The notes beneath the pieces were generated by a model. It was not told the origin of the DNA and did no database searches. It worked only from the letters and a program-made list of their open reading frames with translations. From Lama guanicoe (taxonomy: Eukaryota), in contig MU055594.1 in the NCBI GenBank assembly GCA_013239625.1, forward strand, positions 16,062,445 to 16,126,444: a stretch of DNA of 64,000 nucleotides, written 5' to 3'. Shown piece after piece: positions 18,101 through 42,100 of this stretch (the first letter of the stretch is position 1; each line of letters begins with the position of its first letter). The position numbers were made by a program, and so were the translations under genes.

Positions 18101-21100
18101 CTGTAAAGAACTCCAAGGGGAGATTGTGATTATGATTAGGGAGAAAGAACCTACAACAGCAACTGTGAAGCAGTCAGTCAGGTAGGCTATTTGGTGTTCC
18201 TGAAGCCAAAAGGGCAATAGTGTCTCTAGAAGGAGAGCGCTGCCCTAGTGGATTGAAAATAAAAGGTGTCAAATACAGTGATATCAGAAAAATACTAAAT
18301 ATAGCAAGATGAATGCTTTGGGTGGTTTTGATAATTTTAGTGAAGTGGTAGAGATGGAAGTTCAGATTGGAATAAACTGAGAATTTTTTTCTTTTGGCTG
18401 GGAATATAACAGAAAAATTGAGCTCATAGCTAGAGAAGAAGGCAGAGTCAAGAATAGGTGGGTTGATTTTGTTGTGTGTTTTTTTTTTACAAAGATATTA
18501 ATGGGAATGATGGCACAGAAAGAACATAAGGAAGGGAGTGAAGTTATTGAGAGGGTGAGGGGGACTAGGATCCAGAGCACAAATAGGGGGATGGCTTTGA
18601 AGATACCAAGAGGGCTTTCCTTCTGTTTTTAGAGAAGTTGGGTATAAGAACAGACATATCTGAAGAGAAGCTAGGGGAAAGGAAGAGGGAGTCTGAACCT
18701 TGGAATGAACAAATTGACCAGAAAAGATACAAAGGGAAACTCAGAAGGCCATTCTTTTCATCATATGTGATTCTGCCATGATCCAGCATATCTGATTTTG
18801 ATTCATTTTCCCCTCTTGCTTGATTTCAGATGTGCTCTGTTTTGGAGGGGATATCCTAAATATTACAGGTATTTCTCAGTTTTTCTGAATATTTAAAGCA
18901 CCCTGAAGTGAGGAAGACTGTATTTTAGGTGGAATTTGGCATGTTTATTCAGCATTGTTTGATTATTTTTCTAAGTGCTGGGCCCTGAGGAAACACAGAT
19001 GAGGAAGACAGTCTCTGCCTCAAAGGGTCTCCCAGTCTAATGGAAAAGCCTTGTCCATGTTAAGCTCCCATGTATTTTACAGTTTGTTCAGATTGACAGA
19101 AAAATAAGTGCCTTTAAAGCATTCGTGAGAAAACTTATGAGAAGCTTGGTCATTAATAACAGAAGCTACATATAGGAGAGGGAGAGGAGTCAAGAGTCTC
19201 CTATCTGGAGAACTCTTGTGATCATTTACAGCTGTGTGCCACAGAGCTGGCCTGTCTTTTCATTTAAACTTAATGAAACCACTTAAAATCTTAAAATTCA
19301 ACTTGAATGTAAACATATATTTTGTGGGCCTCTTAGCTAGTACCCCGCCCCTTCTGTTAGGATACTGGTGGGGAAAGAATTACCAAAAATAGCTTTAAAC
19401 CTTAGGAACATTTCAGCTTCTACTTAGTCATGTTTTTATATGCTCAATGGTTTTTTAAGATTAAGGCAGTATTTTAACCTAACATAATGTATAGGGCGAG
19501 AAACCTTGCGTGACACCTTGCATGATACCTTTTGCATTATTGAGGGTTCTGCCATGGCAAGTGAATTCAAATATTTGATCTCTGTCAGCCTGTCTTGTGT
19601 GTCTACAGGGAATGTGCTCCTTGCACTCTGGACAGTGGAACAGAATCAACTGAGTGACATCATTACCCTGGTGGCAAAATGCAGTCTGGAGATACAGGAG
19701 AAATTTGGCATCTGCCACACCAGAGAAGGGCAGGACCTGCAGTTAAAGATAGGTAGTAGCTATTAAGAGTGATAAGTTGGGGGGGGGGGGGGAAGGAAAC
19801 ATTAAAAATTTTAAAGATAAATGACAACTTGGAAAAAAAATATTTGCGACTCATATCATGTAGACAAAGGGTAAATTTTTCTATAGAAAGAACACCTAGA
19901 AGTTAAGAAAAGACTAACATTCTAGGAGAAAACTGAGCAAAAGAATGAATAAATAGCACATAAACAAAGAAGTCATCTCTTGTAATGTGTGAAAAAACGG
20001 TCAACTTAGTAATAAGAAAAATGCCAATTGAAAGTACATTGAGATCATTCCCTACCTACAAATATGGAAAAATTCAGATGCTGGACACACTGTCGGTGAG
20101 GCTGCGAGGAATAAGCCTTCTTACACAGTGTTGATGGGAGTCAGCAGTGGTGTAACTTCTGTAGAGGGTGATCCAGTCATCTCTACCCAGATTACAAATG
20201 CATTTATTCTTCAGCCCAGCAATCCCACTTCTGAACATTTATCCTATGGGTATACCTGACTGTGCATTAAATATCATGTATATAAGATTATTTATTGCAA
20301 TACAGATTGTGATAAAAGGTTGAAAACAATATCTATAGTAGACTGGTTAAATAAACAATAATATGTTTATTCACTGAGATTCTCTACAGCTTTAAAAAAA
20401 AAAGATGTTCTGATATAACAGTATCTCCAAAACATAGATGAGAAAAAGCAAGATGCAAAGCACTGTGTTTAGTATGCTACCTTTTATGCAAGTAGGAAAA
20501 ATAATAATTTTTCTTATTTATATTTGTATAAAGAAACACTGGAGAGATATATAAGAAACTAATAAAAGTCACCTATTAGGGGAAAATAGTGTAGATAGGT
20601 ATATAGATGGAATCAAGACTTTTTAATGTATATTCTTTATGTAGTTTGGTTTTTGAGCTATGTCATTGTATTACATAATCAAAAATATAATACAATACTA
20701 TAGGAAAAAAGCTGTACACAGAGGCGAAAGTTTCACCAGTGGCAGAGTCAGGATTGGAGGGTTAGCTCTAGACACAAAACTCCAGCTATTCATTTGTATT
20801 TTGAGGACTAGTCAGTAGTGAAGAATCATATTCTGAGTTATATGGCATCTATCCTGTCCTACCATCCTTTTTTAGTTCTTCTGATTTTTGTTTTATTGAT
20901 AGATAATTCATATCTGATACTGTACATAGACATATTTATACAATTTTGAAACCATCACCACAATCAAGATAATGAACATTCAGCACTCACTAAAGTTTCC
21001 TGTGCCCCTTTATAAACTCTCCCTCTCATCCTTCGCCTCCCCATCCCCAAGCAACCACAGCTCTCCTTTCTGTCATTAGAGATTATTTTGCATTTTTAAA

Positions 21101-24100
21101 GAATGTTATATAAGTGATATCATATAGTAGGTACTTTTNNNNNNNNNNNNNNNNNNNNNNNNNNNNNNNNNNNNNNNNNNNNNNNNNNNNNNNNNNNNNN
21201 NNNNNNNNNNNNNNNNNNNNNNNNNNNNNNNNNNNNNNNNNNNNNNNNNNNNNNNNNNNNNNNNNNNNNNNNNNNTATTTATTCACTTTTTGATCAGCAA
21301 TTGGGTTCTCAGGTTTTGACTTGCAAATAAAGCTGTTATGAATATCCATGTACAAGTCTTTGTATGGACATATCCATATGTTTCTCTTGGACAGACACCT
21401 AGACATGAAAGGTCTGGGTCATATAGTAGATGCGTATTTAACTTTTAGAGAAATTGCTAATATTTCTTCCAAAGTGGTTGTACTATTTTACATTTCTACC
21501 AGCAGTGTATGAAGGTTCCAGTCTCTTGCCAATATTTATCCTTGTCTGTCTGAAGAACTTTCTTTAAAATTTCTAATAATGTGGGTTTGCTGGAGATGTG
21601 TTAGTTCAGCTTTTGTGTGTCTGGAAAAAATTCACCCGTTTTTGAAAGATACCTCTACTAGGTATGGAATTCTAGATTGACAGGGGCTTCCCCCACCCCT
21701 TCTTATATTAAAGCTGTCATTCTACTGACATCTAGCTTGTAATGTTTCCAACAAGAAATCCTTATTTTTGTTTCTTTGTATATAATGTCTCTCCCTTTTC
21801 CACCCTAGCTGTTTTCAAAATTTTTTTCTCTGTCACTAATTTTAGGCAATCTGATTATCATGTGCCTTGGTACAGTTTTCTTCATCTTTCTTATGCTTGG
21901 GACCTATTGAGATTATTGGATCTATAGGCTTCTAGTTTTTGTAAAATTTAGAAAATATTCTGCCATTATTTCTTCAAATAATTTTTTCTCTCTTCCTCCT
22001 CCTCTGTCTAGCTACACACATATTAGGCTGCTTGAAATTGTCCAACTCACTGATGCTGTGTTTATTTTTTTTTGTCTTTTTTCTCCCTGTGTTTCATTTT
22101 TGGATGGTTTCTATCGCTGTGTTTTCAAATTTACAGATGTTCTCTTTTGCAATATCTAATTTGCCTTTGATCCAATCTAATGTATTTTTCATCTCAAGCC
22201 TGATAGTCTTCATCCATATGAAGATACCATATCTTCCATGTCCCTACTTGTTCAGTCTTTTCTCTAGGTTCTTGAATATGTAGAATATAGTTGCAGCTTT
22301 TTTAATGTCCTGATCTCCAAATTCTGTCATTTGTATTATTCTGCACTGGGCTTGACTGATTGATTTTTCTTCTAATTGTGAATCATATTTTCCCTTTTCT
22401 TTGCACACCTCGTAATTTTTGGTAGGTGCCAGACATTGTAGAATTTAACCTTGTTGAGTGTTGAATTTTTAAATATTTCTATAAATATTCTTAAACTTAG
22501 TTCTGGAATGTAGTTGACTTGATACTTTCAGGTTTTACTTTCAAACTTTGTTGGAGGGGCCAGAGCAGTGTTTAGTCCAGAGCTAGTTTTGCCCTGTTCC
22601 TGAGTCAAACCCCTTACGGGTACTGTACCTAATGTCCTGTGAATTATTAAGTTTGATACTCTGGCTAGTGGGAATAGGAACTATACCCGGCCCTGTCTGA
22701 TATTAAAGATTGTTCCCTCTAATCTTTTCAGGTGGTTCTTTCTGTAGCCTCAAGTTGTTTCCTCAGATTGATTCACTTATCAGTACTCAGCTAAAGACCG
22801 AGGGAGACCCAGTTCTCTGGAGTTCTCTCTGTCTACTCTCCAGTAGTCACAGTGCCCTACAAACTCTAACCACCTTGGCCCCTCAGATTCCTAGTTCTGT
22901 CTCCTCAACTCGGGGACCCCTCCAGGCTATACCTGGGTTTCTTCTCTCCAAGCTGTGTACTGGAAACTCTCTAGGCAGTGAGCTGGGGTATCAGAGGGTT
23001 CACCTTGTTTGTTTCTCATCTCTCAAGTATACTGTCCTTAATTACTTGATGGCCAGTATCTTGAGAACTGTTGTTTCTGTTGTTTCGTGTCTTTTTTCCC
23101 GGTTCCATGATTGTTCCAGGTGTTGTGGTAAATTTACTACCTGTTATTCTGTCTTGGCTAAAAGTATATGTCTCTGCCGTTCTTTTAAAACTACTTTTCG
23201 CTTGTTTTTAGTGTAGATTGGGTGACTGACTTACCTAAGGGCAGACTTCTCTTGGTTATAGGCATTTCTTTTCTGGCAAGCAAACCAGTTTTTCAGCCCT
23301 ATTAGCAGTAAGAAATCCAGGGCAAGAAAAACAGGAGGCAGAATAAAAGCGTATGGCAGAGCCCATGCCTGGTAAAATAGTGATTGTCTACTGTCTCAGT
23401 GCTGCTTACATGTGAGGAGGACTGGTGTGGTCAGCAGTTTCTGAGCATAACCATTTGGTCTCTGCCATCAGGACCTAGCTGTCCTTTAGAAGAACAATTT
23501 AGAAACAAAACTCTCAGACACCTAAGATCTCTTTTTTCTTCCCTCATACAACTCAGGCTTATTTGAATGTCTGTCTCTAGGTGTGTTTAAGACAAAGAAA
23601 TCTGGAGCAAGGTGTTACTTTTGAGATTGCGCTCACCTAATACTTCATGGCAATAACGAGATTGGCATGATGCATAAAACCATGTGAGGATTCCAGACCC
23701 CGCCCTTTGCAAAGTTTTCCAACTGAGTTTGGCTGTTCATCACGTGTCTCCTTTTTCCTGGATAGGTCTGTCTGCAGGACGGATTTCCCAGGTTATTGTT
23801 GGAGACGAGCAGCGACAGTACCTCTTGGTGATTGGGCGGGATGTGGACGGTGTCCAGTTAGCTCAGCGTTTGGCTCAGGCAAATGAGATTGTCTTATCCT
23901 GGAACTGCTGGAAGCTCTGTGAACAGTACATGTTTGAAGTGGAAATCATGAGGGAGGACGAAGCTGTGAAGGTAGGAGGCTGCTCACATCCATTGAATGT
24001 CCTGCAGAGGCCTTCCTACTACCCGGGGAAGTGCTCTGGTGGTACTCACACATGGCCTGACCAAACCAACAAATGTTGGAACTCTATTTTAGAGGGAGGC

Positions 24101-27100
24101 AGGGAATATTCTCCCAGGAAGATAGACGAGGCAGAACAGTAAGGCTGGAAAGATAAGAGATAAACAAGGGAGTTGGCATCCTCAGCCCCTCTGTTAAGGA
24201 ACCAAAGGTAATCCAGTTGGTGGGTGGGCACAGAATTGAGCAGTTCCTTTCTGTAGTTAAGAGATATGCGGATCAGTGACCCATTTGATTTCGATGAGCA
24301 TTTTGACAAGTGCCTGGATTACCTGCCACATTACCGGACAAGTGCTGGTAAGTTACTTGGCCCTTTGTATCCAATACCAAAATTTCAAAGATTAATTTTT
24401 CACATGCATGGAGACATTTTGTTTGTTTTCCTTTTCTCAGACATTCTAAGAACAGCCCTGGAGTTGGATCCAGACTCTGCACTTGAGCAAACCCTGAGGA
24501 AGCACATAATGAAAAGCCTTCTGAAGAAGGTTATTTTGTAGTTCTTGAGTCATCGTGTAGACTGTGTGTTTGTGTAAAGAATGTACATTTATATGTGATG
24601 ATCATTTGTACTGATCCAGTTCACCTCCTGCTGCCCATTTTAGTACCAGCAGATTTTCTCATCTGCATCAGTTACTACAGTGACATGTCTTACAAGTTTA
24701 GATTTCTCAGTCCTAGAAAGCAGAAGCCATATTTGTTTATGTTTGTCCCTCTAGAAGCTGGTACACTATAAACAGGTATAGAGTATATGCTTGGTAAATA
24801 TGTGTTGATTACATGTATCTGAATCTATGTGAATCCCTTAGTGAGCGATTTAATGGCTAGGAGAATTGGACATACCAAACTAAGTCTTAGAAAGGAAATA
24901 TAAAAGCATAGCAAATTTCATCAGTGAATTAGTTTTAAAGTCAAACAGTTTTAACTCCAAGTGTACTGGTTGGTATATCTTCCATACTGCTTGAACCTGA
25001 GTTTTAAGTTTTTTGTCTAACATCCATAAATTATTTTCTCATGTTTACCATGGAATATTGAATTTAAATGCCTAAGCATGATAGTGAAAGTTGAAGATAC
25101 AGACAAGGTAACTCACTGTGTCTTTGTAGATTGATGAAGGGCAGCCTATGGAGTATATATCTGAATTCCGTACCGTGACTACGGTTTTGGTCAGCCTAGA
25201 GCTCCGCAAGACAGAATGGATGTTGCATTTGTGTCATCTTATCCAGGAGGCTGCCTTATACATCTCCACAGTGATAGAGAAAGGGGGTGGCCAGCTGAGC
25301 CGGATCTTTATGTTTGAGAAAGTAAGTACAAAGGAATTTGACACATCAGCATTAAAGGTGAGTGAGGAATAATAGTCTTGTATCACCAGTTTATTTCTCA
25401 CATAACACAGGCATAAGTCAGATCCTCGGCTGCTTATTTTGTAGCAAGCTATATTACATTAAAACTTCAACTAGTAATAGTTAAGGAAAGAGATGTTCTA
25501 GTTAATTTAATTTTCAAGGTAACTAAGGGTTACTCTCCATATCCTTTTTAAATCTATCGTTGTTGAAAAAAAATCCTTCTGAAGGCATAAAGAATGTTTT
25601 TATGGCTCTATTAGTAAAGTATATGTAATCAAATCTTTCTCATAAATTTAGGAGCTTGAAAAAGAGCAGTATTGTAATATTTGACATTCTAGGTGAAGAA
25701 AATAGAAGCAGATAGAGTTAGCTTAAGTTGGACACTAAAAACTGAATTTTTGAAAAGTTCTTGACATCAGTTTTTCTCATGTTTTGAATTTCAGTTCTTT
25801 AAATAGCTAAATTAAGATTTTATTTCTTCTTCTTTTTAAAAAAATGTCCGTGTTGCTGTGGCCTAGCGTGCCCATTTCATGAATCTTATAGAACCCTACA
25901 TTCCTAACAGAAAACCAGCTAGGAAGAAATCTGGAAGGAGTCTGGGTTCACTAAGGGAAATTGGTGCAGTGGACGCAAGCCATATTTCTTCCCCAGATCA
26001 AGTTCCGTTTTCTTTCTCTGTCATCTATTTCAGGGCTACATGTTCCTCTGTGTTTTCGGACTTCCTGGGGATAAGAAGCCAGATGAGTGTGCACATGCCC
26101 TGGAGAGCTCCTTCAGCATCTTCAGCTTCTGCTGGGAGAATCTTGCTGAGACCAAGTGAGGAGGAAGGTGGGGCAGAGAGGAACTTCTCAGGCCCAGGGG
26201 GCTCTTCAGGCAAGGAAGGAGGCAGTAGCAAGTAGCAGGGGTTGAGGGCATCTGGAATCTGCCCAAAGGGGAGAGAGGGAACATTCTGAGGATAGTCAGA
26301 AAACAAAGTCTGTTAAGAATCACTGGATACAGAACTGTGTACCAGATACCCAGGGGAAATGAATGCAAGTTTCCATCCAGTGGGGTAGGAGAAGGGGAGG
26401 GACACAATATGCATAGCAAGATTCAAGAACATTGCGAAGGAACAAGCAGATGTGGAAATGAATATAAAAATAATGTATCTGTATGTGGAAGGAAGGCTGC
26501 CCGTCTGTGGGGAGGGGCGGCATGGGAAAACAAATTGTGGGGCAGTAACCTAGATAGGAGGGACCACAGCTGGTTAATGCTCTCCTTCTTGGCTTTCGCT
26601 TTTGGTCTTTCCCAGCCCTACTAATTTTTCTGGAATTCACACTGAACTGACCTCCTGCTCTTTTTATCTATAAAATAAGGAGTTGGATCAGAAAGCCTCT
26701 AAGTTCCTTTTCAGTATTACTGCCTTTTTAATGGTATCACTGAATTTTATTTATTTTTTTTTTTATAATGGTATCACTTTAGTAAGATATGCTGTTCCTT
26801 TGGGGGAATATCCACACAGGATTTGAGGACAGACGATCTGGGTTTCGTTACCAGCTCTGCTATACGCTAGTAACTTCTCTTCTGTGGCCTTAGTTTCCTC
26901 ACGTGTAAAAGAAGGATACAAATATTCACACTAGTAGCATATACTAAAGTATTCTATAAATGTTAAAGCATTGTGTAAATGTATGACACAGTTTTTATTC
27001 ATCTTGAATAAGTATGGCAAGCAAACAAATCTCTGACTTAGTGTTGACATTAGAAATAACTTTTCAAATCTATTCACTTTCCCCATAGTTTTCTAGTGAA

Positions 27101-30100
27101 AAAAAAAAAAGGCCATTTGAAAAATTCCAACCAATCTTATCATAGTTGCGCTAAGGAAAATGGAAATTTTCTATACTTCATTAGGATTAGGCTTTTGTAG
27201 GTGGGAGGGACCATTTTGCTCCTTTTGACTATCTCCCTAATATTCAGTACTGTGTACCCATCATGTGATGCAGACTGACAGCAGCTTCTGGCCTTTTCCA
27301 TTTTGAGCTCTAAACTAGACTTCTGGATCCAGAGAGTGGCACGTCTAGTGTCTGACTTAGAGGCTTCTGAGTGCATATTTACTCACTGTTGTTTTTCTGA
27401 TCCCCAGGCTTGTTTCCATCAGTATCACCAATGGACCAGTATTCTGTGGCATGGTTGGGGCAGTAGCAAGACACGAATATACAGGTAGAATAGGACATTG
27501 GACTGTTAGCTCTGTGACTTGTTAGAGGGGTGAAGGTGGAGGAGTTGGTTCAAAAATTCTCCATCCTTTTCTTTACTTCTCCCTGATACAGTTATTGGCC
27601 CAAAAGTGAGCCTTTTGGCAAGAATGATAACTGCTTATCCAGGTTTGGTGTCCTGTGATGAGGTAACATATCTAAGATCTATGCTACCTGCTTATAACTT
27701 CAAGAAGCTCCCAGAGAAAATGATGAAAAACATCTCCAACCCAGAGAAGATGTATGAATATCTTGGCCATAGAAGATGTATGTGAGTGTCATTATGTGAT
27801 ACTTCACTCCCATCTCTTTATAGTAGCAGGGCATAGGAATAATCAGTGCTTGATTATATGAAATTAGAAAGAAAGATGCTTCTAGTGCTGGCCTGCTAGA
27901 ATAGGAAACGTAAGTGGAGGGTTTCGTGTCTGAGAGCTTCAGGTTTTATGTGTCAGTGAGCTTCTTGCTGTCCAACAGGAAGAGGATCGCAGTAGCTCAC
28001 TAATCTAGATGTTCTTTTTCCTTTGTATACTTCACAACCTATTTACTTTCCTGAGCCTGGAGCAGTCAATGCTTTTTCTCCCCTTCCCCCACCAAAAACA
28101 TTTTTTTCACTTTTTAAAAAACTCTTGTACAGAACTCCGGACCTCTTTAGTTGTCTGAAATACTTGTTTATGAGGACAACTTGCCCTCTGTCTATTTAGA
28201 GATGTATTATCTATCCATCCCAATCTATTTTTAATTGAAATGTTTCCCTTTGTCCTTTTTTCCAGAATGTTTGGGAAGAGACATTTGGCCAGAGAGAGAA
28301 ATCAAAATCACCCATTGTTAGGTAAGTTTTCTTTTTTACCTTTAATCATATTTTTTTTCAGCTGTAGATGGTTACATATGATTTCAAAAACAAAATGCGA
28401 GACTAAATGCTTCTAAACTTTTATTAAAAAATAGATTTATTAGTGAATTTGTTAATTTTGAAGTGGATTTTCCATTTATTTTCCATGTTGAATGTTTAAA
28501 TTTCAAGTTGGGTCCTATCACTTTGCCTGAGAAGTGCCAACATTTAGTAAGAATCTTTGTAAGTCAGAGTTAAGCTATTGAGGTCTGATCTGCTTGTTGT
28601 TGATCATCTTAAGGGGGAAATTTCTCATTCTGAAATAGTAAAGATAGCACCGACACTGTTCCACCCATACTGTATATCCCGATCTTTGTTTTATCTACTT
28701 CTATTCGTCCATTATTTTCATGTGGTGGTGACAGACTTTAAACACTAAATTGTTACAATGGAAATTTTTACAAAAAGCTAAGAAGATATGATAGTCTCCA
28801 TGCCCATGTGCTGCCTAACTGTTCTAAATGTTATTACTTGGGCTTTGGAGCAAGCCCCTCAAGCCCAACACACATTTCTGTATCATGAAGAGTTGATTTT
28901 CTAGAAAGAGATGTGAAGGTTCATCAAAGAATGGGATTCTGTCAAAGATATTGGGGGAGAAGCCATTCTGAGAATCACCTTTGTAAATTAATTCAAATAA
29001 ATAAGTGTCTGCTAAAAACCACAGGTGTTAGGTGCTCCCTGTCTCTCTACAGACCGGGAGAAAGAACTAGAAGCCTTCCAAATGGCACAGCAGAGATGTT
29101 TGCACCTGAAGAAGGGACAAGCAGTTCTGTATGAAGGTGGAAAAGGCTATGGAAAAAGTCAGCTGTTGGCTGAAATAAACTTCCTGGCCCAGAAAGAAGG
29201 ACACAGGTAAAGACTTGTGCTATGCACCTATTTGTTTTGGGGCTCCTTTGCCTCGTTGGTGAGACTCTTGTGTTGTTAGATTCAGAATCATTGGGCTGGT
29301 GGAGTGAATAACCTCTCTGTGGATCAGGGGACTCCCAGTGACCACAGTAACATTCATCAGGGTGTTGCCACTGAAGCTGAAGGAAGCAGATTCCAAGCAG
29401 CGCTTCTATGCCATCCAGACCCTCATGGCTATCTTCTTTGAGATTGATACATGCCCAGCCTGTTACCGGCAAGAGTGCCTCTTCAAACAGCTCCATGGGA
29501 TGGTGGAAGAACCGCTTCACTGTCTTTTTAATGACCTCTTCTTCGTGAAGGTAATGAAGGCAGTAGCTCTCTGAACTGGATTATTTGTATTTTTGGTGGA
29601 TAGTTGGACCCAGGATTGTCTTCTAATCTAACACCTGTTGGCCATATGTATATGCATCGTTTAAGAACAGATAGTTAGGAGTGGCAGGATCAAGATTTGA
29701 AAAGCCTTTGACACCAAAACCCAGGTTTTTTCCTTTTTTGAGAAGAGTGGATTCTAGGACTGACTCTCAGTCTTGCTAGCTGTATGTCTTGGCACAAATC
29801 ACTTAGCCTCTCTGAGCCTCAGTTTTTTTTCAACGGTGAAATGATGATGATAGTACTTTATATGGGTTTTGCATGAATTTTGTAAAGGATGTAATATATA
29901 AGAGATTGCATTGTAAATGTGAAAGTGCTAAAATTTGTCCAGGTGATACTGACCAGTCGAGCATCTCCAACAATTACATCCACGTGTTCTTGAGTCAATT
30001 GCAGTGTTCTGTTTTTTAACCTTACCTGCCCTACCCCAGGCCATGGAGTATGTCACTTGAACTAGCATCTGAATCTCAAAAGCTTCCAGTGGTCTAGGAT

Positions 30101-33100
30101 TTATGCGGTCTCCAGCAGCGAGTAGGCTAAGAATTCCTTGGTCCACAATTCCATTTATTCATCTTCCATCACTTCTCCTAATCTACCCCAGCATGCAGGA
30201 TGTTGTATTGAGTGAAAAATAGGAAAAATGAAAATTTGTCCAATCCTTCAGCATAGCACTTGCTTAAGCCAGGCCTTACCTGGGACCCTGGCCAAAGCAG
30301 TCAAGTAATAGGCTCACTTTGGCTCTCAGGTCCATGATAGCTCATGTGCCAGCCTGACACAGTGTTGGAGACATCCACTGCGATTCTTTCTCACAAGTGT
30401 CATGCATACATTCATTATAGTATACTTGGAAGCATGGGGGTACTGGAGTTGTCCAAATTGACATTACTAAGTCTCACCTGTCACTTTACTCCTTAGTCAT
30501 GATCCTTTAAAGATTTGCCAGAGTCTGGTATGGAAAGGAGCGCGCTCTCTCTAACTACCAGTGGACTTTCAGTCTGCCCTCTGAACTGTATATGGATGTT
30601 GGATTAGTATTTGTAACCCTATGCCTAGTCCTGTGGAAAGCTATTCTCACTCAAAATAGAATCATTTTCTGTTCCCTTTTGAGAACCTGTATATTTTTAT
30701 TAGATTGTTATTTTGAAAGATAATATCTGAATAATTTTCCCGGTCAGTTTCCCTTATCCTTCAGAGTTTCACACATGGATGACCTGGCCAGACAAAAGAA
30801 GGTTAAAGCATGTTTTTTTCAAGTGCTTCAGAAGGTGGGTACTTTTGCTACATGCCGTCAACTCTTAACATGTGCAGATAGTTTATGCTCATTTTAATCT
30901 ATCTCTATCATACCTTGACTTAGGCATTTCTTCATTGTTTGTATCTATCTTTTTAAAAAATTTTGTATATATATATTTAGATTTTTTTTAATTTTATTAA
31001 TTTTTTTGGTGGGGAGGAGGTATTTTTTTAAAGTGTATATGAGTGGGGCATGGTAACTGGTAGTTTTAGCAAGCACTCCTAGGTGATTCTCATATGCAGC
31101 CTGGTCTGGAAGCTGGTTTAAAATACTATGAATTCCCACAGTTTGAAGCTTTTGCCAAAATGAAATATTTGAAAGCTTCATATTTGATTTGGAGAATATT
31201 TTGATGCTCATTTCATGTTTCAGTTAGAGTATTTTCTTGTTCAAAGAAACTCGGTAGATTTCTTTAGGAATTAGATATACAGGCTATATTTTATATTTAT
31301 GAAGTAAAATATTACCTGGACTTAGGATACATTTTACTCTGAAAATCCCAGCCTATGTTGACATTTTACTTAAAATTGTTGATGGGAAATTTATGGTAGA
31401 TTTCAAAATAAAGTGACTTCATTTCTAATCAGAGGTTGTCATTGTTTCCTTGCTGTTATTTCCAGGCAGTGAGGGAAACACCGCTGATATTCCTCATTGA
31501 CGAGGCCCAGTATATGGATGCAGCTTCCTGGGAGTTTTTGGGAACATTGCTCTCCAGTGTGCCCATCATCATGGTGATGACATTGACCCCCACCTTCGCC
31601 CTGTGTGGCTGGGCCCAGCACTTCCTGCAGAGCCCTCAGGCCATCCTTGTACCCATTTTGAAGTTGGCAGAGACCTCACTGCTGAGAATGGCATGTTGGG
31701 AACTGGGGGTGGTGAGCATCCCCCAAGAGCTACAGATGTGAGTGGCTAGGACCAGCTGGGCACTTCATTAAGGGAGGAGCCGGTGCCATAATATAAGTGA
31801 GAAGGCTCAGGTCTCACCAAAGTTGAGGGAGAGAATGACGTTAGCGACCATGGTGAGGCCCAAAACTAGATTTAAACGTAGACAGTCTCCTAGTACCCAG
31901 TAAAGGACTATCTCCCTGGGCCGTTCATCCAGGTTTTCACAGGTCTGTTAGGACCTGGATGACTTGCTTTACATGTCCATTATGTGTGGTCAGGCCAGTT
32001 TTTGTCAGGCCCTTTAGCAAGGGGATGTTAGTTCCTTTTAACATCAATAGAAGGAAGATAGTTAAGAGAAAAGTTACTGCCAAAATACATTTCAAAACCA
32101 ATCAGAAACTTTTTTTAACATTTTTATGCCAAGGCTTCCTTCTGTTAGTGTATATCATCAAGAACTGACTTTAACAACCGAAGAAATATTCCTCAGTATG
32201 AAATACCCTTATGCTTGGCTTTCTTCAAGTGGACATCTTTAGTCAGTGGACATCTTTAATCCCCTACTTACCTCTCTACAGCTACCTTCTCCGCAGGTGC
32301 TTTGGAAACCCCCTTTACTGTGAGGTCTTATGCCAGGACCTTCTCTCTAAGAACATATTGCTCTTTCATGACCTCCAAAAGGAGGAGGTGGAGACTAGCA
32401 AGTGGGAGACCCTCTCAGGTAAGCTGAGTACCCCAGGGTTCTACCCTGGTCCTGCTGCTGGAGTTCATTCTTGACCATGGCATCACCTGGCCCTTATGAA
32501 GCATGTGTCTATTCCCTGCTGGCATCATAAGCAAGGTTAGGCCTTCCTGGCTAAGTGTACTATACAGATAATATGTAGTTATGTTGAAAACACTAAATCC
32601 CTGCCTCAGGTAAAGTAATTGAGTCAATCTACTTTAGTTCCTTTTTGAGCAGCCCAGGAGGTGAAGATAGGAAAATAGGATTTATAAACATCAGAGTCCA
32701 CTAGAAAGGATTGATAAACTTGAGAGTCCAATAGAGAATTGCACGTTACTGATGAGAAGGGTGACGTGGTAAATCTGAATGAGGAATGGAAGAAGGGAGG
32801 AGGAAAGAGAGAGAAGTATGTGTAAAATCCAGAAAGGCATCCTGGAGCTGTGAGGTAGCAGAATCAAGGGCTGTTGGAAGGTAAACAGGAAGGGTGAGAA
32901 TGTTGGATACCATGTGGTACAGAAAATGTTGTTCATTTCTAAGAGAAAATTAGAGAACCGGCAGGATGGGTGGGTAAACCACTTTAAATCTTATAGCTCC
33001 TTTCATCTTAATCCTTTTAGTTTCTTGGCTAAATTCTTGTATTTTTGTATCTTTAAAACCACAGTCTCTAAGCATGGCATTTTCCTCAGTCGTAGTTTTC

Positions 33101-36100
33101 TTTTCCTACAGCCAATGCCATGAAATCCACAATGTATAGTATTTCTCCTGCCAGCTCTGAAGACCAGGACCTTTATGTATGTACAGTCAAGGATGATGTA
33201 AACTTGGATACAGTGCTTCTCCCACCATTATTAAAAGGCAGGTCCCCTAAAAACCTCAAGTAAACCAATTACAGATATCATTGCACTTAGTAATTTGGTG
33301 GTTGATTGAGTATAGGTCTCTCATTATCATGCTAGCTTTATTTCTTTAAAAAAGAAACCTGCCTTCCAGAAATAAATTTTGGCACTACCAGAAGAGCTCT
33401 TAAAGACTTGTAATGCTATCTGAGTAATGATTTACTTAAGTAAGCCCACTGTTCTCTTTGAGGCTGACTGATTATCTGGAAAAGTTTTCTAGTTATTTAA
33501 TAAAAATTATGTCCTGAGTTTCCCTTTGTGCATGTTCCTGTGCTGGAGGAGACAGTGAACAAGGGAGACAATGTTACTGAAGTTTAAGAAAATCCATGGT
33601 GGTAGTGAGGAGACAGTGTTACGCACATAGCAGGAATTTCATAAAAAGAGTACAAAGAAAGTTTATAATGAATGATGAGATAAAGAGTAAAGAAGCCATC
33701 AGAATTGGGTAGATATAATTAGAGAGGATCTTCTTCTTAGAGACAAGGAGGTTTTGGGGTTTTTTTTTTTTCCTTAATATTCTATTCAGGTATTTGGTGG
33801 GCAGGGTACTTTGCTAACCTTCTTGAGGAAAATTATGATGAATAAGTAGGCCTTCAAGTCAAATATGTTCTTGCTGAGAATATAGGATATGCATATGAAA
33901 CAGCAGTACAGAACACCTTGGTAATTAAGAGCCAGGACTCTGGGGTCAGAAAAACCTGGGTACCATTGGCTCCTCCACTTACTGGCTGTGAAACCTTATA
34001 TAAACTTAGATCTAAGTCTTAGTCCTCTCATCATTCAAATGGGGTTAATGATAGTTCCTACCTCATGGGGTTGGTTGAGGATTAAATCAAATAAATCATG
34101 GTGCATAATACATATTCAATGAATGTTAGCTATTATAAGCTATTCACTCTGGTGGTTTTAGGTCCATCTGGACAGTTATATACCTACAGCCGTGATAGGC
34201 CACACTTAGCATTGGCTTTACTAACTTAGAAGCATGCAGGTCAGGAAACAGCACTCTAGCAGAACAGCAGCAAGTGGTTTTCTTCAGTGGGAATCCCCAC
34301 ATCAGTTTCCACTGCTATCTCTGGAGCCTCAAGGAATAGCTTAGATGTGATGGAATGAGGTCACTCATCTCTCCTGGATGAGTGCTTGGATGCCCCATTT
34401 CCCAGCTAGGAACTGGCATCTCTTATAATAGCCATCTAGGCATAGCCTGCAGGCCCTGCCAGGAGTGTGACCTGTCACAAGAATTACTATACCCAGGGAA
34501 GCCCAAAGCTGTGGCTTACCACCAGGTATTTGTACCTTATTCACAGTTCTCCTAGTCCAAATTCAACTTCCTATGAGGGATCACTCTTAGCATAAGCAAT
34601 GTTACCTGGTAACTCAGCTGGCATTCTAATTTTATCAGGGTTCTGGGAAAATAGCTAGAAAGTTAATCCACATGGAAAGAAAAAGCTAAAATGAATCGTT
34701 CAGTCAGCAAAGCCTTGGTCTAAATGAAAGGCCAAAGCTAAATTGCGAAAGGCCATATAAGTTATAAGAGTATTTAAGAAGGGTGCTGGCATGATTATAT
34801 TTGTACATGAGGCGTATAATCCAACCACTAGTTAGTGTGTCTTAGGGCTAAGAATGAGAGGAACTTGGAGATGTTCAAAACAGAGTAGTATGGTGATCCA
34901 GGTGAAAATGACTGCTTATAGTAAAATTGTTTGGGAAGAATCATATTCAAGATTATTTAGAAAGATAATGAGCAGATGACTGGTGGTTGTGAGGGAGAGG
35001 AAAAAGTTTAGAATTATTCCAAGATTTTGGGCTTGGTGGCTTACTGGTCAGAATATGGAGAGATTTAGTAAAATACTTTAGTTAATTCAGATCTTTACAG
35101 TTATTTGAATTCTGGGACCTGGAAGCCAACCTCAGTGTTTAGTTGAAAGTAGGAGGAAAATGGGAAGAATTGTTAGTACAGGATTCAGAACACAACTTCA
35201 GGTCTACCAACAAAAGGTTTTGGTGACCATGAGGAGTACAGTTTCAGTGTTTTGGTGAAAACCTGATTGTTGGTTGAATAATAAATGGGGAATGGGGACA
35301 AAAGAGGACATGGAGATAAGGCTCTTTCAAGAGATTTGGCTGAGTGAAAAAGGAGTGGGCAAAAAGCAAGCCTTTTTTTTAAATGAACACAATGTATTAT
35401 TAGCACAATATATTCTACGTTTGTAGAAAGCTTATTCATTGCTTTTTTTTTTTCCTTCAGAAATAGCAGTGAACCAACTGGATCAATTGAACCCAGAGGA
35501 ACAGTTGCTGGTTAAGTGTGCAGCAGTCATCGGTCACTCCTTCCACATAGATCTACTGCAGCACCTCCTGCCTGGCTGGAGTGAAAATAAGCTACTTCAG
35601 GTGCTGAGGGCTCTTGTGGACATACACGTGCTCTGCTGGTGCAGCAAGAGCCAAGAGCTTCCTGCTGAGCCAATATTAGTGCCTTCCTCTATCGAGATTA
35701 TTGAACAAACCAAAGAGAAGAGAAAGCCAGGTGAGGAAGAGCTATTTATTCCCTTGTTCTCAGGCCCAAATAGAGAGCTTTGGGTGAGGGTATCTGTGTT
35801 CAGAAAGAGCATCCGTATCATAGATCACAGGCCCACTCTCTTAAAGCTTATGTCTAAGAAATTGGGAAAAGTGCTTATTTTAATCATGGAGGAGCCATGG
35901 TTATAGTAAATGAATGGCCTTTGTTTTTTAGAGTTGTCTTAATTTCAAGAATTCTAGTTCCTTGTTAACCCCATGTGTTAAGTATTTGTGTTTTGATTTT
36001 TGGTTCAAAAAATATTGCCATAGTCTTTTATTGGCTTTTTGGGATAAATAAAAAGAAAAAAAGATGAACTATTTCTAATTTTAGAAGGTTATAAGGAAGT

Positions 36101-39100
36101 TAAACACATGTGACACTGAAACAGACATCAATAACGCAAAATGTACGTTAAATAGCTGCAATCTCAAATTCTCCACCTGAAAGAATAAAATTGTGGCATA
36201 AGCTACTCAGAACACATATAACCCACAGATAATTTCCCTTTGACTTTGAAATATGTTTGGGCCTTATATTTGGGCAGAGCCTTTCTGATTATTTGATATT
36301 TACAATAATTTTTAGTAAAAAAAGCTCAACTTAGAAGAAACAACTAAGAAATCTATTCAGTGTAGTTCTGTACCACTGATCATTTCTTCCCTCTTGTACT
36401 TTATATTAAATATGATCAGTGCCACTCTCAGATTGGTGTAAAATTTTTTATGCAAAGAAAGCAGTAATACAAAGTAAGAATTAGAAATAAAATTTTCTTA
36501 TAAACTAGCAGCATGTGCTTGGGAATTTGCTACCTGGTAGCATAAAAGGACTTTAAGTGAGACTCTCACTTAGATTTTCCTGTATTTCAGTTGCTGCCTC
36601 TCCTCTCAGGCTACCAGAGGGGCTATCCCTGCTTCAAACCGAGGACCTAGAATTTGGAGTGCCTCTACTGCGGGAAGCAGCTTGGGAGCTGTGGCCCAAG
36701 GCACAGCAGGTAGCCCTGCACCTGGAATGTGCCTGCTTTCTTCAAGATTTGGCCTGCCGCTGTGGGAGCTGTCAGGGGGGCGACTTTGTCCCCTTCCACC
36801 GTTTTGCCATCTGTTCTACTAAGAGTTCCAGTGGGACCTCCCGATTCTGTAGCTACAGAGATACTGGCTCAATACTAACACGAGTGATCATAGACAAATT
36901 GCAGCTGCCTTCTCCCCAAGGTAAATCCAGGAGGCAGACAGGGGACGTGTGGGTAGCACTTCTTATTCATGTACTTGGAGCTCTTCATCTAAAAGGTGAA
37001 ATCAGATTAAGGGAGAAAAATAGGTGGAAAGAGCCATTTATCCCTGAAATGCCGGAAATAAGAAAAATATAATCTCAAAGGTAAAAGGAACTGTAGAGAT
37101 CATACTTGTTTTGGCTGGCAATCTTGGGCACGTTACTTAACCTCAATTAATTGAGGAAAATAATAATACCAATTTCATAGGATTGTCGTGAGGACTAAAT
37201 GAGTTAAAATTTATAAAGGGCTTTGAATAGTGCCAAGCACATGGTTAGTGCTCAGTACACTTTCATTACTGTTTTTATAATTATTCAGCTCAGTAACTAT
37301 TCAGCTCAGTACACGTACATGGAGTCTTTGTGTGTATCAGATACTGTTGTAAGAATACAAAATAAAATTATCAGTTTTTTGGGGGTGATGCAGACATATA
37401 AATAAAGAATTCCAATATGGTATGGTAAAGGTGATGAAAATAGACTATGTAGGGATTGGGTACATCGAGAAAGGGCTGTTAGCCCAGCCTGAGAAAGGAG
37501 TAAGATAGGACTCTCCCCTGAAGGAGATGATGCCAGAAGTGAGATTTGAAAGATAAGTAAGAGCTAGCTACTTAAAGAAGACTCGTTAGTGGATAGATAG
37601 TCTCCCAAACCTGTAATCCTTCTACCACATCCCAGGTAAGAGTTCCTCCTCTTTGTTTTAACATTTTCAGTTAGCTTATGTTGTAGGACAGCCCATTTCA
37701 TTGTCAGTAGCTGTCAGAAAGCTGCTTTCATGCAGGTGAAATCTACCATCTGGCAACTTTTTCATGCATTTTTTCAGAGTTGTACCTTCTTTCATATTTG
37801 AAGACAGCTATCAAGACCCAGCGAAATTGTCTCTTTTTCTACTTTGACAGAAGAAGAGTTGGTGTTGGTGTTGGCAGGGGAGAGGGATATGGGAGAGATG
37901 ATAAATTGGTGGTGGTAAAGGACCAAAATGAAGGTGTTGACCTATGATCCTAATACCTCATCTAGCTGTAAAATTCTTAATGACTCTATGAAGGTGGACC
38001 AGTGACTTGGAGAAATTGGTCACTGGCTGATGAGCTCTGTGGGCATTTGCACTTTTGTACTTTCTGAGGGGAAAGAGGAAAGCAACAGTGAATGTCCCGG
38101 TTGGTGTTATGAAGAAATCACATTATCATTCATATTTCCTATATGACCTTTTGTTTTTGAGAGGTCAGTGTCAGCTTTAGATTAGACAGCCTAGTCAACC
38201 TGGGTGTGAGAGGCTTAAGACATTTCCAGCACAGCCGAACCCTGAGGAGGCTTCCCAGACCCAGGGCCTCTGTGCATGGCCGTGCAAAACAGGTACTGCC
38301 TACACCTGGAGGGTGCTGTTCACAGGCTGCGATAGGATGGTGCCCTGGGAATTGTGCATTGCAGTGGTGCTGCCAAGTTCCAGTTTCCTTAGTTACCTTA
38401 GCCTTACTTTACCTTATGAGACATCATTAAATAATCAGAGAACCAGTTCTTTTATTTAACACAAGTCCTCCCTATAACGGTTCTCTTGGACTTCTTTTCA
38501 ATCCCACCTCCTGTGTTGCTGAGTCCTAATAGGTAACATCTCCACATCATTCCCAGTCTTTGCTTTTTGATCAGAAGACAGATGCAGAGGAAGAGTCAAA
38601 TCTGGAGGATAAAGTGTATTTAAGGCCAGCTAGGTAAAGCTGAAAACCCCCACTGGCCCACTGAAAACCCCCACTGACTGGTGAACTGTGGCATCTTGTG
38701 CCTTCACGATTTTCTTCACTAGGTCTTAGGCTCTGTGGTTCACTCCCATCTGTTCATAAACCTGATCCATATATATTCATGGATTTTTACTATTAGAATT
38801 AGCCATCAAGCCAGATGGACACATTCTTTATTCTTTTCTTTTGCAAACAGAATTAGGAATTGGTTTGGGAGGTTTGCGAATGAAAGAAGTTACCATTTGA
38901 ATCACAAATAGTTGCCTTTAAGAAAAAAAATTAGCACCCTAATTTTGTGTGTAAGGCTAATAGTAAACCCAAACTTACCATTTTTATAATGAGGGAGGCA
39001 ATTAGCTCATGAACTAAGCTGCAAAGGAAATAGAGTCAGGAATTTTGAATGTTCTCAGTTAATACCAGGCATGGATAATTAAAGATAATCATCTTTTTTT

Positions 39101-42100
39101 CCCTACAGATAGTTTTCAGTTCCAGACAAAATCACCCAGAAGTCAGGAGACCTTCACAAATGAACACTACAGGTAGATGGAGATGCTGAGAGTGGGCATG
39201 AAGGGGGCCAGAAAGTGAGACACAGATGATCATTTAACTAGGGTATTCACCTTACCTGCAGACAGGGAAGGCAGCTGACCATCTAGGAGTGGTGACTCTT
39301 GTGCTTGGCCCCAAATTCAAGCTAACAGAGAATCAGAAAGGCAATTTTTGATTCTTTGTAGGGAAATTATTTCTTAGAGCTAGAGAAAAACTTTAATTAC
39401 TCTCAAATGCTTTGTACATACAGATTTTTTTTCAGCTATAAATTTGCCTTCTCAATTACTTTTGAACCCAGATGATATTAAAATGACTTTATTTCCATAA
39501 CCATGAACCACCTGACTTTCTAATGTCTTATCAATTTTAAATGTCGCTACCTTGAACCCATCAGCCACTCTAGAGTTTCCTATCCCATTTATCCAACCTG
39601 ATTTCTTACAGTTTTCAAACAAAAATCTATATTCCACACAAATCACCCCTACACTTACCTTTTGTCTTTGCTCACACAGTTCTCCCTTTTAAAAATACTC
39701 AGTGGCATCCACATTCTTCCACTTATCAGAGTGTTCACCATCCTTCAGAGCCCTCCTCAGTTCCCACTTTTTTTCAATCATTGTGTCTCAGAGAGATCAG
39801 CCCTCTTTTGAACTCACGGTGCCTGTGGAAATACACTGGATTAATAGCTAGAGAGGTGAATTCCAGTTTTGGTTCTACATGGTAGCTGTGAGGTCGTATA
39901 TAAGTCACTTACACTCTCTGAGCCTCAATTTCTTCATCTGTAAAAGGTAAATTTGGCTGCCTGAATGGCAAGGTTATTGTAGGATAAGATGGTAACATTG
40001 TGTAAAATAATATTCAAAGTGCCATGACAGAATTCAAATGTGCTAATAGAGAAATGTATTATTTACTGCTTTGTATCATTTTTTATGTTTTTGTGGAATA
40101 CTGTTTAATTTACTCTTCAGATATGGTCATTTCCCCATTTAGTTTGTGAGATACTTAGATTGGCTTTGGGTTTTTAAAACTCCCTAATAGGGCTTTGCCG
40201 TTATAGATCAGGTCCCTGACTTTCAAAAACTTACGGAGTGATTGAGGAGAAGGATAGACATAGAATTAGTCAATTATAAAGGAAAGCTTCCTGGACAGAG
40301 TGGCTTTGAGACCTGGTAATGGTCCGGCAAGAGTGTCTGCTTTGTGGCCTCTCTCAGCTCTTCATCTTCTCTCACAAAGAACAGAGGAAGAGTTCCTGGA
40401 TCAAGTGAACCGGAGACTGGCTCAGACCAACCCGGAGAAAGATATGTTGACCACAAAGCCCTGCCACTGTGATGAGATCCTGAAGTTAGTGCTCTCACCC
40501 CTCACCCAGCACTGCTTGGTCATTGGAGAAACCACGTGTGCATTTTATTACCTGCTGGAGGCTGCTGCTGCCTCCTTGGACCTGTCAGATAATTATATGG
40601 TGAGCAAGCTCTGCTCTCTGCCCCTGAGCTGAGCCAAGTGACTGAGGGAATTTGTTAGGATTTCTTACTGTCAAGTAGCCTGGAATGAAAAGTGGAGGAA
40701 AATGGGAGAAAGGAGCTGTAATGGGCCTAGGAGAAAACATGAAGTGGGAATGCGGTAGCGAAGGAGCAGCACGTGCTGTCGGTGCTGTCCCTGACTCCTG
40801 CATGCGTAGTCCATTTAGTCCCCATTTCTAACTAAATCCAGCCCCAGTTCAAACTTGCCGAAACCTTGATCCAACCTTCACCCTAAGCACGTGCCTAGCA
40901 GCATCCGAATCCTAATCCAGTTACTCCATCTCTTGTCTTGTTTGAAGGCCTTCTTTTATTTGAGGAAGGCAAGCAGTCTTCTGGGCCGACCCTCAGCATT
41001 CTCATATTTGAAAAAGCACAAGGTGAAGATCTGTCAGTTTGAGGAGGCCACTTTCTGCCGTCTTCGATCAGAGGTGAGGATGAGGGATGACGTTGAAGTT
41101 TGGGTTATTTTCCCTTGAGGGTTACTTTGTTATTTCTTTTAAAATCTCTTTGTTTTTTGTGTGTGATGATAAATGTGATAAAAGGTTATACAAATTCAAA
41201 ACAGAACTATATGTAGAGTGAAAGAGCTCTTACTAATCCCATGTCACCCCTAGTGTAGTTAATAATGTAGTGCAAATTCCACCAGCTGTACACATACAGT
41301 CATATCATTATTGTTTTCCATTTTTTACAAATAGAATCATATTCTGTATTCTTTCTTCTGCAGCTGACTTTTATTCCTAATAATGCAGATTGAACATATT
41401 CACATATTGGCATATATCCAATCGTAGTTGTAGCTGCCAATACTACATTGTATCCATATGTCAAATTTATTTAATCATTCCTTTCTACATGCACATTTAA
41501 GTTATCTCTAATTTTTGGTTATTATAAACATTGGTACAGTGAATATTCTCATAAATATCTCTTTACTCCCTTGTGAGAGTGTTTCTGTAAGAGAAATTTC
41601 CAGAGGTGGAAATGCTAAAGCAGAAGATATGAATATATTTAATAAATATGTTGCCAAATTGTCTGGCAGAATATTGTGTCAATTTGAGTTCTTCCCATTT
41701 CTTCGCATCCCTACCAACACCAAATATTATAAGTCTTCTTTGTACTTGCTAATCCGTAAATGATAATTATATTTTAATGTATATTTCTTAATTAATAAGG
41801 TACTTTTTTATATGTTTATTGGTCATTTATTTCTGTGAATTACCTTTTCATGTACTTTTCTCATCAGAGTGTATATAAACTAATTTTCGAGTATGGGGGA
41901 GTGGACAAAATGGGTGAAGATGGTCAGAAGGTATAAACTTCCAGTTATAAGTTTTGGGGATGTGATGTACAGCATGTGACTGTAGTTAACAATTCAGTAT
42001 TGTATATTTGAAAGTTGTTAAGAGTGTAGATCTTAAAAGTTCTCATCACAAGAAAAAAAATGTAACTGTGTGGTGCCAGAATTTAATTAATCTCATTATG

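What the first reader, a model, noticed from the sequence alone, without database searches (positions are those of the whole stretch)
29053..36920. STAND NTPase module is intact despite the dead cyclase
Seen: PLLDREKEL pre-P-loop motif, Walker A GGKGYGKS (29136-29159), Walker B LIFLIDEAQ (31484-31510), GNP in exon 17, then QLDQL..CAAVIG and a long helical C-terminus. Established: full-length sAC has a STAND-class P-loop NTPase with GxP motif followed by TPR-like helices, related in architecture to NLR/Apaf-1 switches. Inference: keeping the NTPase motifs while losing cyclase catalysis suggests the selected function is nucleotide-gated switching or oligomerisation, with the dead cyclase as an adaptor or sensor. 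This would be a natural probe of what sAC's poorly understood C-terminal two-thirds does.
Basis: partly seen in the sequence, partly recalled or inferred. Interest (0 to 1): 0.75.

Follow-up and report, generated by a model that had tools for sequence, protein, structure and literature searches.

The report
P-loop switch module in dead-cyclase sAC paralogue
A second copy of the soluble adenylyl cyclase gene has lost its cyclase metal-binding residues but still encodes an open, motif-complete nucleotide-binding module, though whether that module is used, or even correctly spliced, remains untested.

Summary
Walker A (29136-29159), Walker B (31484-31510), the GNP motif (32304-32312) and the QLDQL..CAAVIG exon are in frame in eight exons. 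I place these as exons 13-20 of a 32-exon, 1,604-codon ORF (14761-49044) with no in-frame stop. The gene lies downstream of an NFYA-like gene.

Family evidence is consistent but weak, because I searched exon by exon:
- Pfam AAA_16 scores E 0.0049, below its cut-off.
- 29 of 30 ESM Atlas hits are AAA_16 clusters.
- MalT-type winged-helix hits are leads only.
- No TPR hit appeared.

"Intact" needs two caveats. The only in-frame donor of exon 18 is GC, not GT. The exon 14 acceptor is weak.

The four public orthologue fragments found (squirrel, orangutan, squirrel monkey, pangolin) are all short models, and none covers Walker A or B. GNP is kept in all three sequences that span it, including orangutan.

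Earlier notes of this scan on the same window cover the cyclase half. Interest is moderate.

The parts
29067..29206 (+). Walker A GGKGYGKS is at 29136-29159, and the donor is CAG|gtaaag.
   Evidence: Exon-wise Pfam and PDB give only generic P-loop hits: AAA_7 at E 0.24-0.27 and ABC ATPases at E 0.64-1.1.
29361..29550 (+). Exon 14, between Walker A and Walker B. Its acceptor is weak (cattcatcag|G). A second in-frame acceptor lies at 29328, and out-of-frame AG sites lie nearby.
   Evidence: No RNA evidence.
30748..30834 (+). Exon 15, 29 codons, phase 0 at both ends, with AG and GT splice sites.
31466..31737 (+). Exon 16, with Walker B LIFLIDEAQ at 31484-31510 followed by the strand-4 region.
   Evidence: Pfam AAA_16 scores E 0.0049 and 17.8 bits against a cut-off of 32.6, matching profile positions 131-159 of 167. 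In the ESM Atlas, 29 of 30 hits are AAA_16 clusters, best score 0.92. Identity to the squirrel model is 69 of 74 residues.
32282..32418 (+). Exon 17, with the GxP motif (GNP) at 32304-32312.
   Evidence: The 16/17 and 17/18 junctions agree with the public squirrel model P0001. GNP is kept in all 3 sequences that span it.
33112..33237 (+). Exon 18. The only donor that keeps the frame is GC (AAG|gcaggt). The nearby GT sites at 33241/33242 and 33259/33260 would shift the frame.
   Evidence: The same junction (K, split E, IAV) is used in the squirrel monkey model P0003. The squirrel read-through tail GKF.. fits a canonical GGT AAG T donor there; this is an inference.
35461..35730 (+). Exon 19, containing QLDQL..CAAVIG. 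It is probably the winged-helix part that follows the NTPase.
   Evidence: Atlas leads are HTH_77 at 0.81 and WHD_MalT at 0.79, below the 0.9 line. The orthologue P0003 hits TIGR03903, a TOMM kinase/cyclase fusion, at E 0.00029 over profile positions 750-827 of 1267. Identity is 70 of 89 to squirrel monkey and 50 of 60 to orangutan.
36618..36920 (+). Exon 20. An alternative in-frame acceptor lies at 36591. This is the start of the C-terminal region and has no family hit.
14761..49044 (+). The whole gene model as context: 32 exons, 4,815 nt, 1,604 codons plus stop. It starts at an ATG inside a CpG island.
   Evidence: The CpG island spans 14400-15200, with CpG o/e 0.75-1.07.

Best explanation
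Shown. Window 29053-36920 holds exons 13-20 of a full-length paralogue of soluble adenylyl cyclase (32 exons, 1,604 codons). They encode the nucleotide-binding core of its STAND-type module: Walker A, about 120 residues of core, and Walker B. After the core come the helical arm with GxP and a probable winged-helix segment. The residues needed to bind a nucleotide and Mg2+ are all present (Walker A Lys and Ser, Walker B Asp-Glu, GxP), while the cyclase metal-binding Asp positions are lost.

Inferred. The protein binds ATP or ADP, or another NTP, in this pocket. It uses the bound state as a conformational or assembly switch, or at least as a structural cofactor, for a function that no longer involves making cAMP. 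A partnership with sAC or its sperm partners is one candidate. Whether it hydrolyses the nucleotide is open. I recall that AAA_16-type STAND proteins carry a sensor-1 arginine, and I did not see one at the expected place; this point is recalled and was not tested here.
For: - Motifs sit in frame at the stated coordinates.
- The 32-exon chain has 0 in-frame stops, and no split codon tested was a stop.
- AAA_16 support: Pfam E 0.0049 and 29 of 30 Atlas hits.
- Exon sequences are 147/160 identical to the squirrel model and 173/204 to the orangutan model. The 8-residue intron read-through tail of the squirrel model shares only 1 of 8. I recall that neutral drift between rodents and primates would leave roughly half the residues identical, so this argues for long purifying selection on exons 16-19.
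- A CpG island is kept at exon 1.
- RNA runs from reproductive-tract samples hold 0.36-0.50 of the sampled words of 29000-37000.
- D99 aligns with Asn.
Against: - No orthologue sequence covering Walker A or B could be obtained.
- All four public models found are short ORFs of 127-212 aa. This is partly because the search can only return short proteins.
- The exon 18 donor is GC, and the exon 14 acceptor is weak.
The RNA-run share exceeds the exon share (1,539 of 8,001 nt), so it reflects intron-containing RNA or DNA carry-over.
- Purified full-length sAC showed no isoform-specific nucleotide effect (PMC12802110).
- Exon-wise family scores are below curated cut-offs, and there was no TPR hit.
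Confidence: 0.5

Rival explanations
1. Passive retention. The gene is alive, but the motifs persist because the module is kept as a folded scaffold, for example for a partner such as the sperm Na+/H+ exchanger complex that stabilises full-length sAC. There is no nucleotide-dependent switching. 'Intact motifs' would then reflect general purifying selection on the fold plus inheritance from sAC.
For: - No nucleotide tested changed the activity of full-length sAC differently from the truncated form. The same paper states that SLC9C1/TMEM217 are needed for sAC stability in sperm (PMC12802110, Discussion read).
- GNP also survives in the orangutan short-ORF model.
- The function of the sAC NTPase domain is called unknown (PMC6660944).
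Against: The binding residues tested (Walker A Lys/Ser, Walker B Asp-Glu, GxP) are all kept, while both cyclase metal-binding positions changed. This contrast is easier to explain if the pocket is used. It rests on one genome only.
Confidence: 0.3
2. Decaying locus. In this species the gene is already, or is becoming, a transcribed pseudogene like human ADCY10P1. It would be disabled at splice sites rather than by stops, so the 'intact' module is never translated as part of a full-length protein.
For: - Exon 18 has a GC donor where the squirrel probably has GT.
- Exon 3 has no GT or GC donor at the homologous end.
- The exon 14 acceptor and the exon 26 donor are weak.
- The closest relative found, the squirrel, is annotated only as a 171-aa ORF that starts just after Walker B and reads through the exon 18 donor.
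- Human transcripts of the locus are untranslated (PMC5940861).
Against: - There are 1,604 codons without a stop or frameshift. With neutral rates as I recall them (about 2e-9 substitutions per site per year, and indels about a tenth of that), roughly one disabling change per million years is expected. Any loss of function must therefore be very recent.
- The GC donor matches the GC-donor consensus, as I recall it, at 6 of 7 other positions.
- Skipping exon 3 keeps the frame, because it is 36 nt long.
- A CpG island is kept at exon 1.
- The short public models are what the length filter of the search lets through, so they do not show that long models are absent.
Confidence: 0.15

Closest known systems
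Full-length soluble adenylyl cyclase (ADCY10, sACfl)
   Same: - The order of parts is the same: two cyclase homology domains, then a P-loop/STAND module, then a long C-terminal region.
- The exon count is similar: 32 here, against 33 stated for ADCY10 in PMC12802110.
- Cyclase exons hit human sAC structures.
- Public orthologue models are named 'adenylate cyclase type 10(-like)'.
   Different: - Only 15/38 and 27/51 residues are identical to human sAC in the two cyclase exons aligned.
- The metal-binding Asp positions are not Asp.
- It is a separate locus, next to an NFYA-like gene.
- I could not compare the STAND part with ADCY10, because no ADCY10 C-terminal sequence was reachable with the tools.
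Bacterial AAA_16 / MalT-type STAND NTPases, including cyclase-STAND fusions (TIGR03903)
   Same: - The Walker B exon resembles AAA_16.
- The next conserved exon resembles MalT-type winged-helix domains and the matching segment of a bacterial kinase/cyclase fusion.
- A GxP motif lies between the two.
   Different: - All scores are below family cut-offs, because only single exons or short orthologue fragments could be searched.
- No TPR or other repeat hit appeared in the C-terminal exons.
- This is a mammalian, intron-rich gene.
Human ADCY10P1 (6p21 transcribed pseudogene)
   Same: It is probably the same locus. The NFYA-like gene lies upstream here; that NFYA neighbours ADCY10P1 in human is recalled. 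Primate models from the locus share 79-89% identity per exon with the window.
   Different: Human transcripts are described as untranslated (PMC5940861). The window has a complete 1,604-codon ORF.
Apaf-1 / NLR switches
   Same: They share the class-level architecture: a P-loop core, a GxP arm, a winged helix and then a helical or repeat region. This rests on Leipe et al. 2004 and Danot et al. 2009, which are cited in PMC12802110 and which I did not read.
   Different: No sequence or fold match was obtained here. Oligomerisation is purely an analogy.

Membership tests
Soluble adenylyl cyclase (ADCY10) family | N-terminal class III cyclase homology domains similar to sAC | tested here: met
   Two cyclase exons hit human sAC chains (4clf, 4oya) at E 3.1e-9 and 0.017. 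Exon 1 alone gave no hit.
Soluble adenylyl cyclase (ADCY10) family | Two metal-binding aspartates in C1 (D47 and D99 in human numbering; the roles are recalled) | tested here: not met
   Asn aligns with D99. The D47 position is His under my splice model, or Cys in the read-through alignment. Neither is Asp.
Soluble adenylyl cyclase (ADCY10) family | P-loop NTPase domain after the cyclase domains; PMC6660944 uses this as its criterion for calling a protein sAC | tested here: met
   Walker A and Walker B lie in frame in exons 13 and 16. The criterion was read.
STAND P-loop NTPases | Walker A GxxxxGK[ST] | tested here: met
   GGKGYGKS at 29136-29159.
STAND P-loop NTPases | Walker B hhhhD[DE] | tested here: met
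   LIFLIDE at 31484-31504. It is one of only 2 such hits in the six-frame window.
STAND P-loop NTPases | Significant match to an NTPase family model (AAA_16 or NB-ARC) | tested here: inconclusive
   AAA_16 scores E 0.0049 and 17.8 bits, below the 32.6 cut-off, for a single exon. In the Atlas, 29 of 30 hits are AAA_16 clusters, best 0.92. The joined model was not searched, by rule.
STAND P-loop NTPases | GxP motif in the helical arm after the core | tested here: met
   GNP at 32304-32312, 87 residues after the Walker B Asp by my exon arithmetic. It is kept in all 3 sequences that span it. That this is the functional GxP is an assignment by position.
STAND P-loop NTPases | Winged-helix domain after the arm | tested here: inconclusive
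   Atlas gives HTH_77 at 0.81 and WHD_MalT at 0.79, which are leads only. TIGR03903 scores E 0.00029 with the orthologue P0003. The AlphaFold model has pLDDT 58.7, and Foldseek found no match at E <= 0.001.
STAND P-loop NTPases | C-terminal repeat or sensor region (TPR-like in the sAC/MalT group, recalled) | tested here: inconclusive
   Pfam gave 0 TPR-type hits in 16 window pieces. NCBIfam gave no family for 10 pieces. Single exons are a weak test.
STAND P-loop NTPases | Nucleotide binding, hydrolysis, and nucleotide-dependent oligomerisation | not testable with these tools
   This needs protein work.
Unitary pseudogene (ADCY10P1-like state) | Stops or frameshifts in the former coding exons | tested here: not met
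   There are 0 in-frame stops in 32 exons and all phases chain. There are two non-GT donors, GC at exon 18 and GG at exon 3.

The most novel reading that the evidence does not exclude
Many mammals keep a full-length 'pseudo-cyclase' whose working part is the STAND nucleotide switch. It assembles, alone or with sAC and the sperm Na+/H+ exchanger complex, in a nucleotide-dependent way. It would thereby isolate, in nature, the function of the uncharacterised C-terminal two-thirds of soluble adenylyl cyclase.
Probability: 0.15. Interest if true: 0.8.

Novelty: new variant of a known kind. Interest (0 to 1): 0.45.

Why it matters
The function of the sAC P-loop/STAND region is stated as unknown in the papers I read. 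The first purified full-length enzyme showed no nucleotide regulation (PMC12802110). A paralogue that has given up catalysis but keeps an open, motif-complete STAND module would be a clean natural handle on that question, because any phenotype or partner must work through the non-catalytic part.

My paper searches found no description of a functional paralogue:
- 'ADCY10P1': 33 papers. The 15 listed deal with human non-coding RNA, methylation or association signals.
- 'adenylate cyclase type 10-like': 3 unrelated papers.
- Two further searches found nothing on it.

[quoted passage not shown] The gene is, however, already in public annotation under that name. The functional claim is untested.

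Tried and rejected
I therefore have no junction or expression evidence. The GC donor and the weak acceptor stay unresolved.
- Orthologues. All 3 protein searches went on this question. Queries were a single exon, a 171-aa public model, and an alignment, so only proteins up to about 300 aa were candidates. Four short models came back, and none has Walker A or B. Candidates known from samples alone were left out by the tool (7, 46 and 7,377 in the three calls).
- Solved structures. The Walker B exon gave 0 hits at E <= 10. The Walker A exon gave only ABC ATPases at E 0.64-1.1. The profile of A1 gave nothing credible. No full-length sAC chain matched.
- Structure prediction. The P0001 model has pLDDT 37.9 and is unusable. 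The exon 19 model has pLDDT 58.7. Foldseek against the PDB found 0 matches at E <= 0.001 and 24 at E <= 10, none of them a STAND protein. I draw nothing from these.
- Families for the C-terminal exons. Pfam and NCBIfam gave no credible hit.
- Other features. Rfam found 0 families on 29100-37100. The minus strand has one 157-aa ORF, antisense to exons 13-14, which I take as chance.
- dN/dS. This was not possible, because no orthologous DNA was reachable.
- Papers. A search for a source on TPR in sAC found nothing usable. Supplementary figures of PMC12802110, which hold the nucleotide tests, are closed; I saw only the main text and the legends.
- Joined model. I left out the joined spliced model altogether. 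It was not searched, folded or printed, and every search was exon by exon or used public proteins.

Full report
**What is at the coordinates.** Walker A GGKGYGKS occupies 29136-29159 and Walker B LIFLIDEAQ occupies 31484-31510. GNP is at 32304-32312, and QLDQL..CAAVIG lies in the exon that starts at 35461. Splice-site listing gives eight exons with chaining phases:
- exon 13, ending at 29206
- exon 14, 29361-29550
- exon 15, 30748-30834
- exon 16, 31466-31737
- exon 17, 32282-32418
- exon 18, 33112-33237
- exon 19, 35461-35730
- exon 20, 36618-36920

Each motif pattern alone is not rare. There are 3 Walker-A-like and 2 Walker-B-like hits in 127,996 six-frame positions. Only one of each lies in frame in this gene. 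By exon arithmetic they are 121 residues apart.

**The gene around it.** Upstream, 7464-7745 encodes an NF-YA domain (CBFB_NFYA, E 2.6e-14). From an ATG at 14761, inside a CpG island (14400-15200, CpG o/e 0.75-1.07), I could chain 32 exons to a stop at 49042-49044. That is 4,815 nt, or 1,604 codons. There is no in-frame stop, and no split codon tested is a stop. All acceptors are AG, and 29 of the 31 donors are GT. This agrees with the earlier scan note s1-861109 ('intact, 32-exon'), which I rebuilt independently. I did not test that note's 'kept by most mammals'.

**Soft spots in 'intact'.**
- Exon 18. The only donor that keeps the frame is GC (AAG|gcaggt). The neighbouring GT sites would shift the frame and run into a stop in exon 19. 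The junction itself is real in relatives: the squirrel monkey model P0003 reads K, a split E, then IAV, exactly as predicted. The squirrel model P0001 reads through this donor. Its tail begins G-K-F, which fits a canonical GGT AAG T donor there (inference). The GC is therefore probably specific to this lineage or assembly. Apart from +2, the site matches the GC-donor consensus as I recall it at six of seven positions, so it may work.
- Exon 14. The acceptor is weak. A second in-frame acceptor lies 33 nt upstream, and out-of-frame AGs lie close by.
- Exon 3. This exon lies outside the finding. It has GG where a donor should be. It is 36 nt long, so skipping it keeps the frame.

**Family evidence.** Searching exon by exon costs power.
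- Pfam gave AAA_16 at E 0.0049 for the Walker B exon (17.8 bits against a 32.6 cut-off; profile 131-159 of 167). It gave only AAA_7 at E 0.24-0.27 for the Walker A exon.
- The ESM Atlas placed the Walker B exon among AAA_16 clusters (29 of 30 hits, best 0.92).
- The Atlas placed exon 19 nearest HTH_77 and MalT winged-helix clusters (0.81 and 0.79; leads only).
- In NCBIfam, the squirrel monkey fragment covering exon 19 matched a bacterial kinase/cyclase fusion family. The match falls in the segment behind that family's ATPase (TIGR03903, E 0.00029, profile 750-827 of 1267).
- No TPR or other repeat family appeared in 16 window pieces in Pfam or in 10 pieces in NCBIfam.
- PDB sequence searches found nothing for the STAND exons. 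The two AlphaFold jobs were too uncertain to use.

The order P-loop core, GxP arm, winged helix is therefore supported. The TPR part is not shown.

**Relatives.** The three protein searches could only return proteins up to about 1.75 times a short query. They found four public models:
- ground squirrel, 171 aa, starting one residue after the Walker B motif
- orangutan, 212 aa
- squirrel monkey, 152 aa
- pangolin, 127 aa, a chimeric ORF sharing the window's start and exon 19

Because of the length filter, their shortness says nothing about longer models.

Identities to the window are as follows:

| Compared with | Exon 16 | Exon 17 | Exon 18 | Exon 19 | Total |
|---|---|---|---|---|---|
| Squirrel | 69/74 | 39/45 | 39/41 | – | 147/160 |
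| Orangutan | 48/59 | 39/44 | 36/41 | 50/60 | 173/204 |
| Squirrel monkey | – | – | 36/41 | 70/89 | 106/130 |

The squirrel read-through tail shares only 1 of 8 residues with the window's intron translation. By neutral rates as I recall them, rodent-primate drift would leave about half the residues identical. Exons 16-19 have therefore been under purifying selection for much of that time. The two primates differ at 11 of 60 positions in exon 19, which hints at relaxation there. GNP is kept in all three sequences that span it, including orangutan. Motif survival is thus not by itself evidence that the motif is used.

**The 'dead cyclase' premise.** Two cyclase exons align to human sAC structures with 15/38 and 27/51 identities. 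Asn stands at the D99 position. At the D47 position I read His from the spliced model, or Cys if the alignment's read-through columns are taken. Exon 1 alone gave no PDB hit, so the residue is assigned by position. Either way it is not Asp. The roles of D47 and D99 are recalled.

**Expression.** Five runs recorded as RNA hold 0.36-0.50 of the sampled words of 29000-37000; four of them come from reproductive-tract samples of one study. Exons make up only 1,539 of the 8,001 bases. I worked beside the named places afterwards.

**Literature.**
- PMC12802110 (abstract, passages and Discussion read) says full-length sAC has a predicted STAND domain with a P-loop, citing Danot 2009 and Leipe 2004. 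No nucleotide tested acted differently on the full-length and truncated forms. The paper also says SLC9C1/TMEM217 stabilise sAC in sperm, and that sAC comes from a single gene 'in most mammals'. Its nucleotide data are in supplements I could not open.
- PMC6660944 (passages read) uses the P-loop NTPase domain to define sAC and calls its function unknown.
- PMC5940861 (passages read) places human ADCY10P1 at 6p21 with untranslated transcripts.
- Four searches found no paper on a functional paralogue.

**Reading.**
- Most likely (0.5): this is a live or very recently live gene whose STAND pocket still binds a nucleotide and serves a non-catalytic role. The pocket residues and the ORF are shown. 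Binding, switching and oligomerisation are inferred.
- Rival (0.3): passive retention as a scaffold.
- Rival (0.15): splice-level decay towards the human state.

The finding is a sound annotation with an attractive but untested hypothesis.

Noticed in passing
window 7464-7745 (+), and probably 4788-5021 (+): These are exons of an NFYA-like gene upstream of the sAC paralogue (CBFB_NFYA, E 2.6e-14). They fit synteny with the human NFYA-ADCY10P1 neighbourhood, which I recall.
   Followed up: partly
window 14400-15200: A CpG island (GC 0.52-0.71, CpG o/e 0.75-1.07) surrounds the predicted start codon at 14761. It suggests a promoter that has stayed unmethylated in the germ line.
   Followed up: partly
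window 16744-16779: A small 36-nt exon 3 in the first cyclase domain has GG where the donor should be. Skipping it keeps the frame. An in-frame GT lies 27 nt further on.
   Followed up: partly
P0004 (pangolin, 127 aa), compared with window 25867-26232: The public pangolin model shares the window's N-terminal start. It then reads the region of exon 9 in another frame and jumps to exon 19. It looks like an aberrant or misassembled transcript model.
   Followed up: no
window about 29.1-29.5 kb, minus strand: A 157-aa open frame runs antisense to exons 13-14. I take it as a chance antisense ORF over coding sequence.
   Followed up: no
window 26509 and 37011 (+): Two further G....GK[ST] pattern hits lie outside the reading frame of the gene. 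They are chance matches.
   Followed up: yes
window 46382-46452: Exon 26 has a weak donor (CAA|gtctga), and its acceptor follows an AGGTAGGT repeat. It is another junction worth checking with RNA.
   Followed up: partly
window 54000-64000: A GC-rich stretch (0.48-0.53) lies downstream of the gene's stop. I did not examine it, and it may hold the next gene.
   Followed up: no
window 3460-6422 and 21139-21275: There are four N runs. I left them as they are, and none lies in a predicted exon of the paralogue.
   Followed up: no
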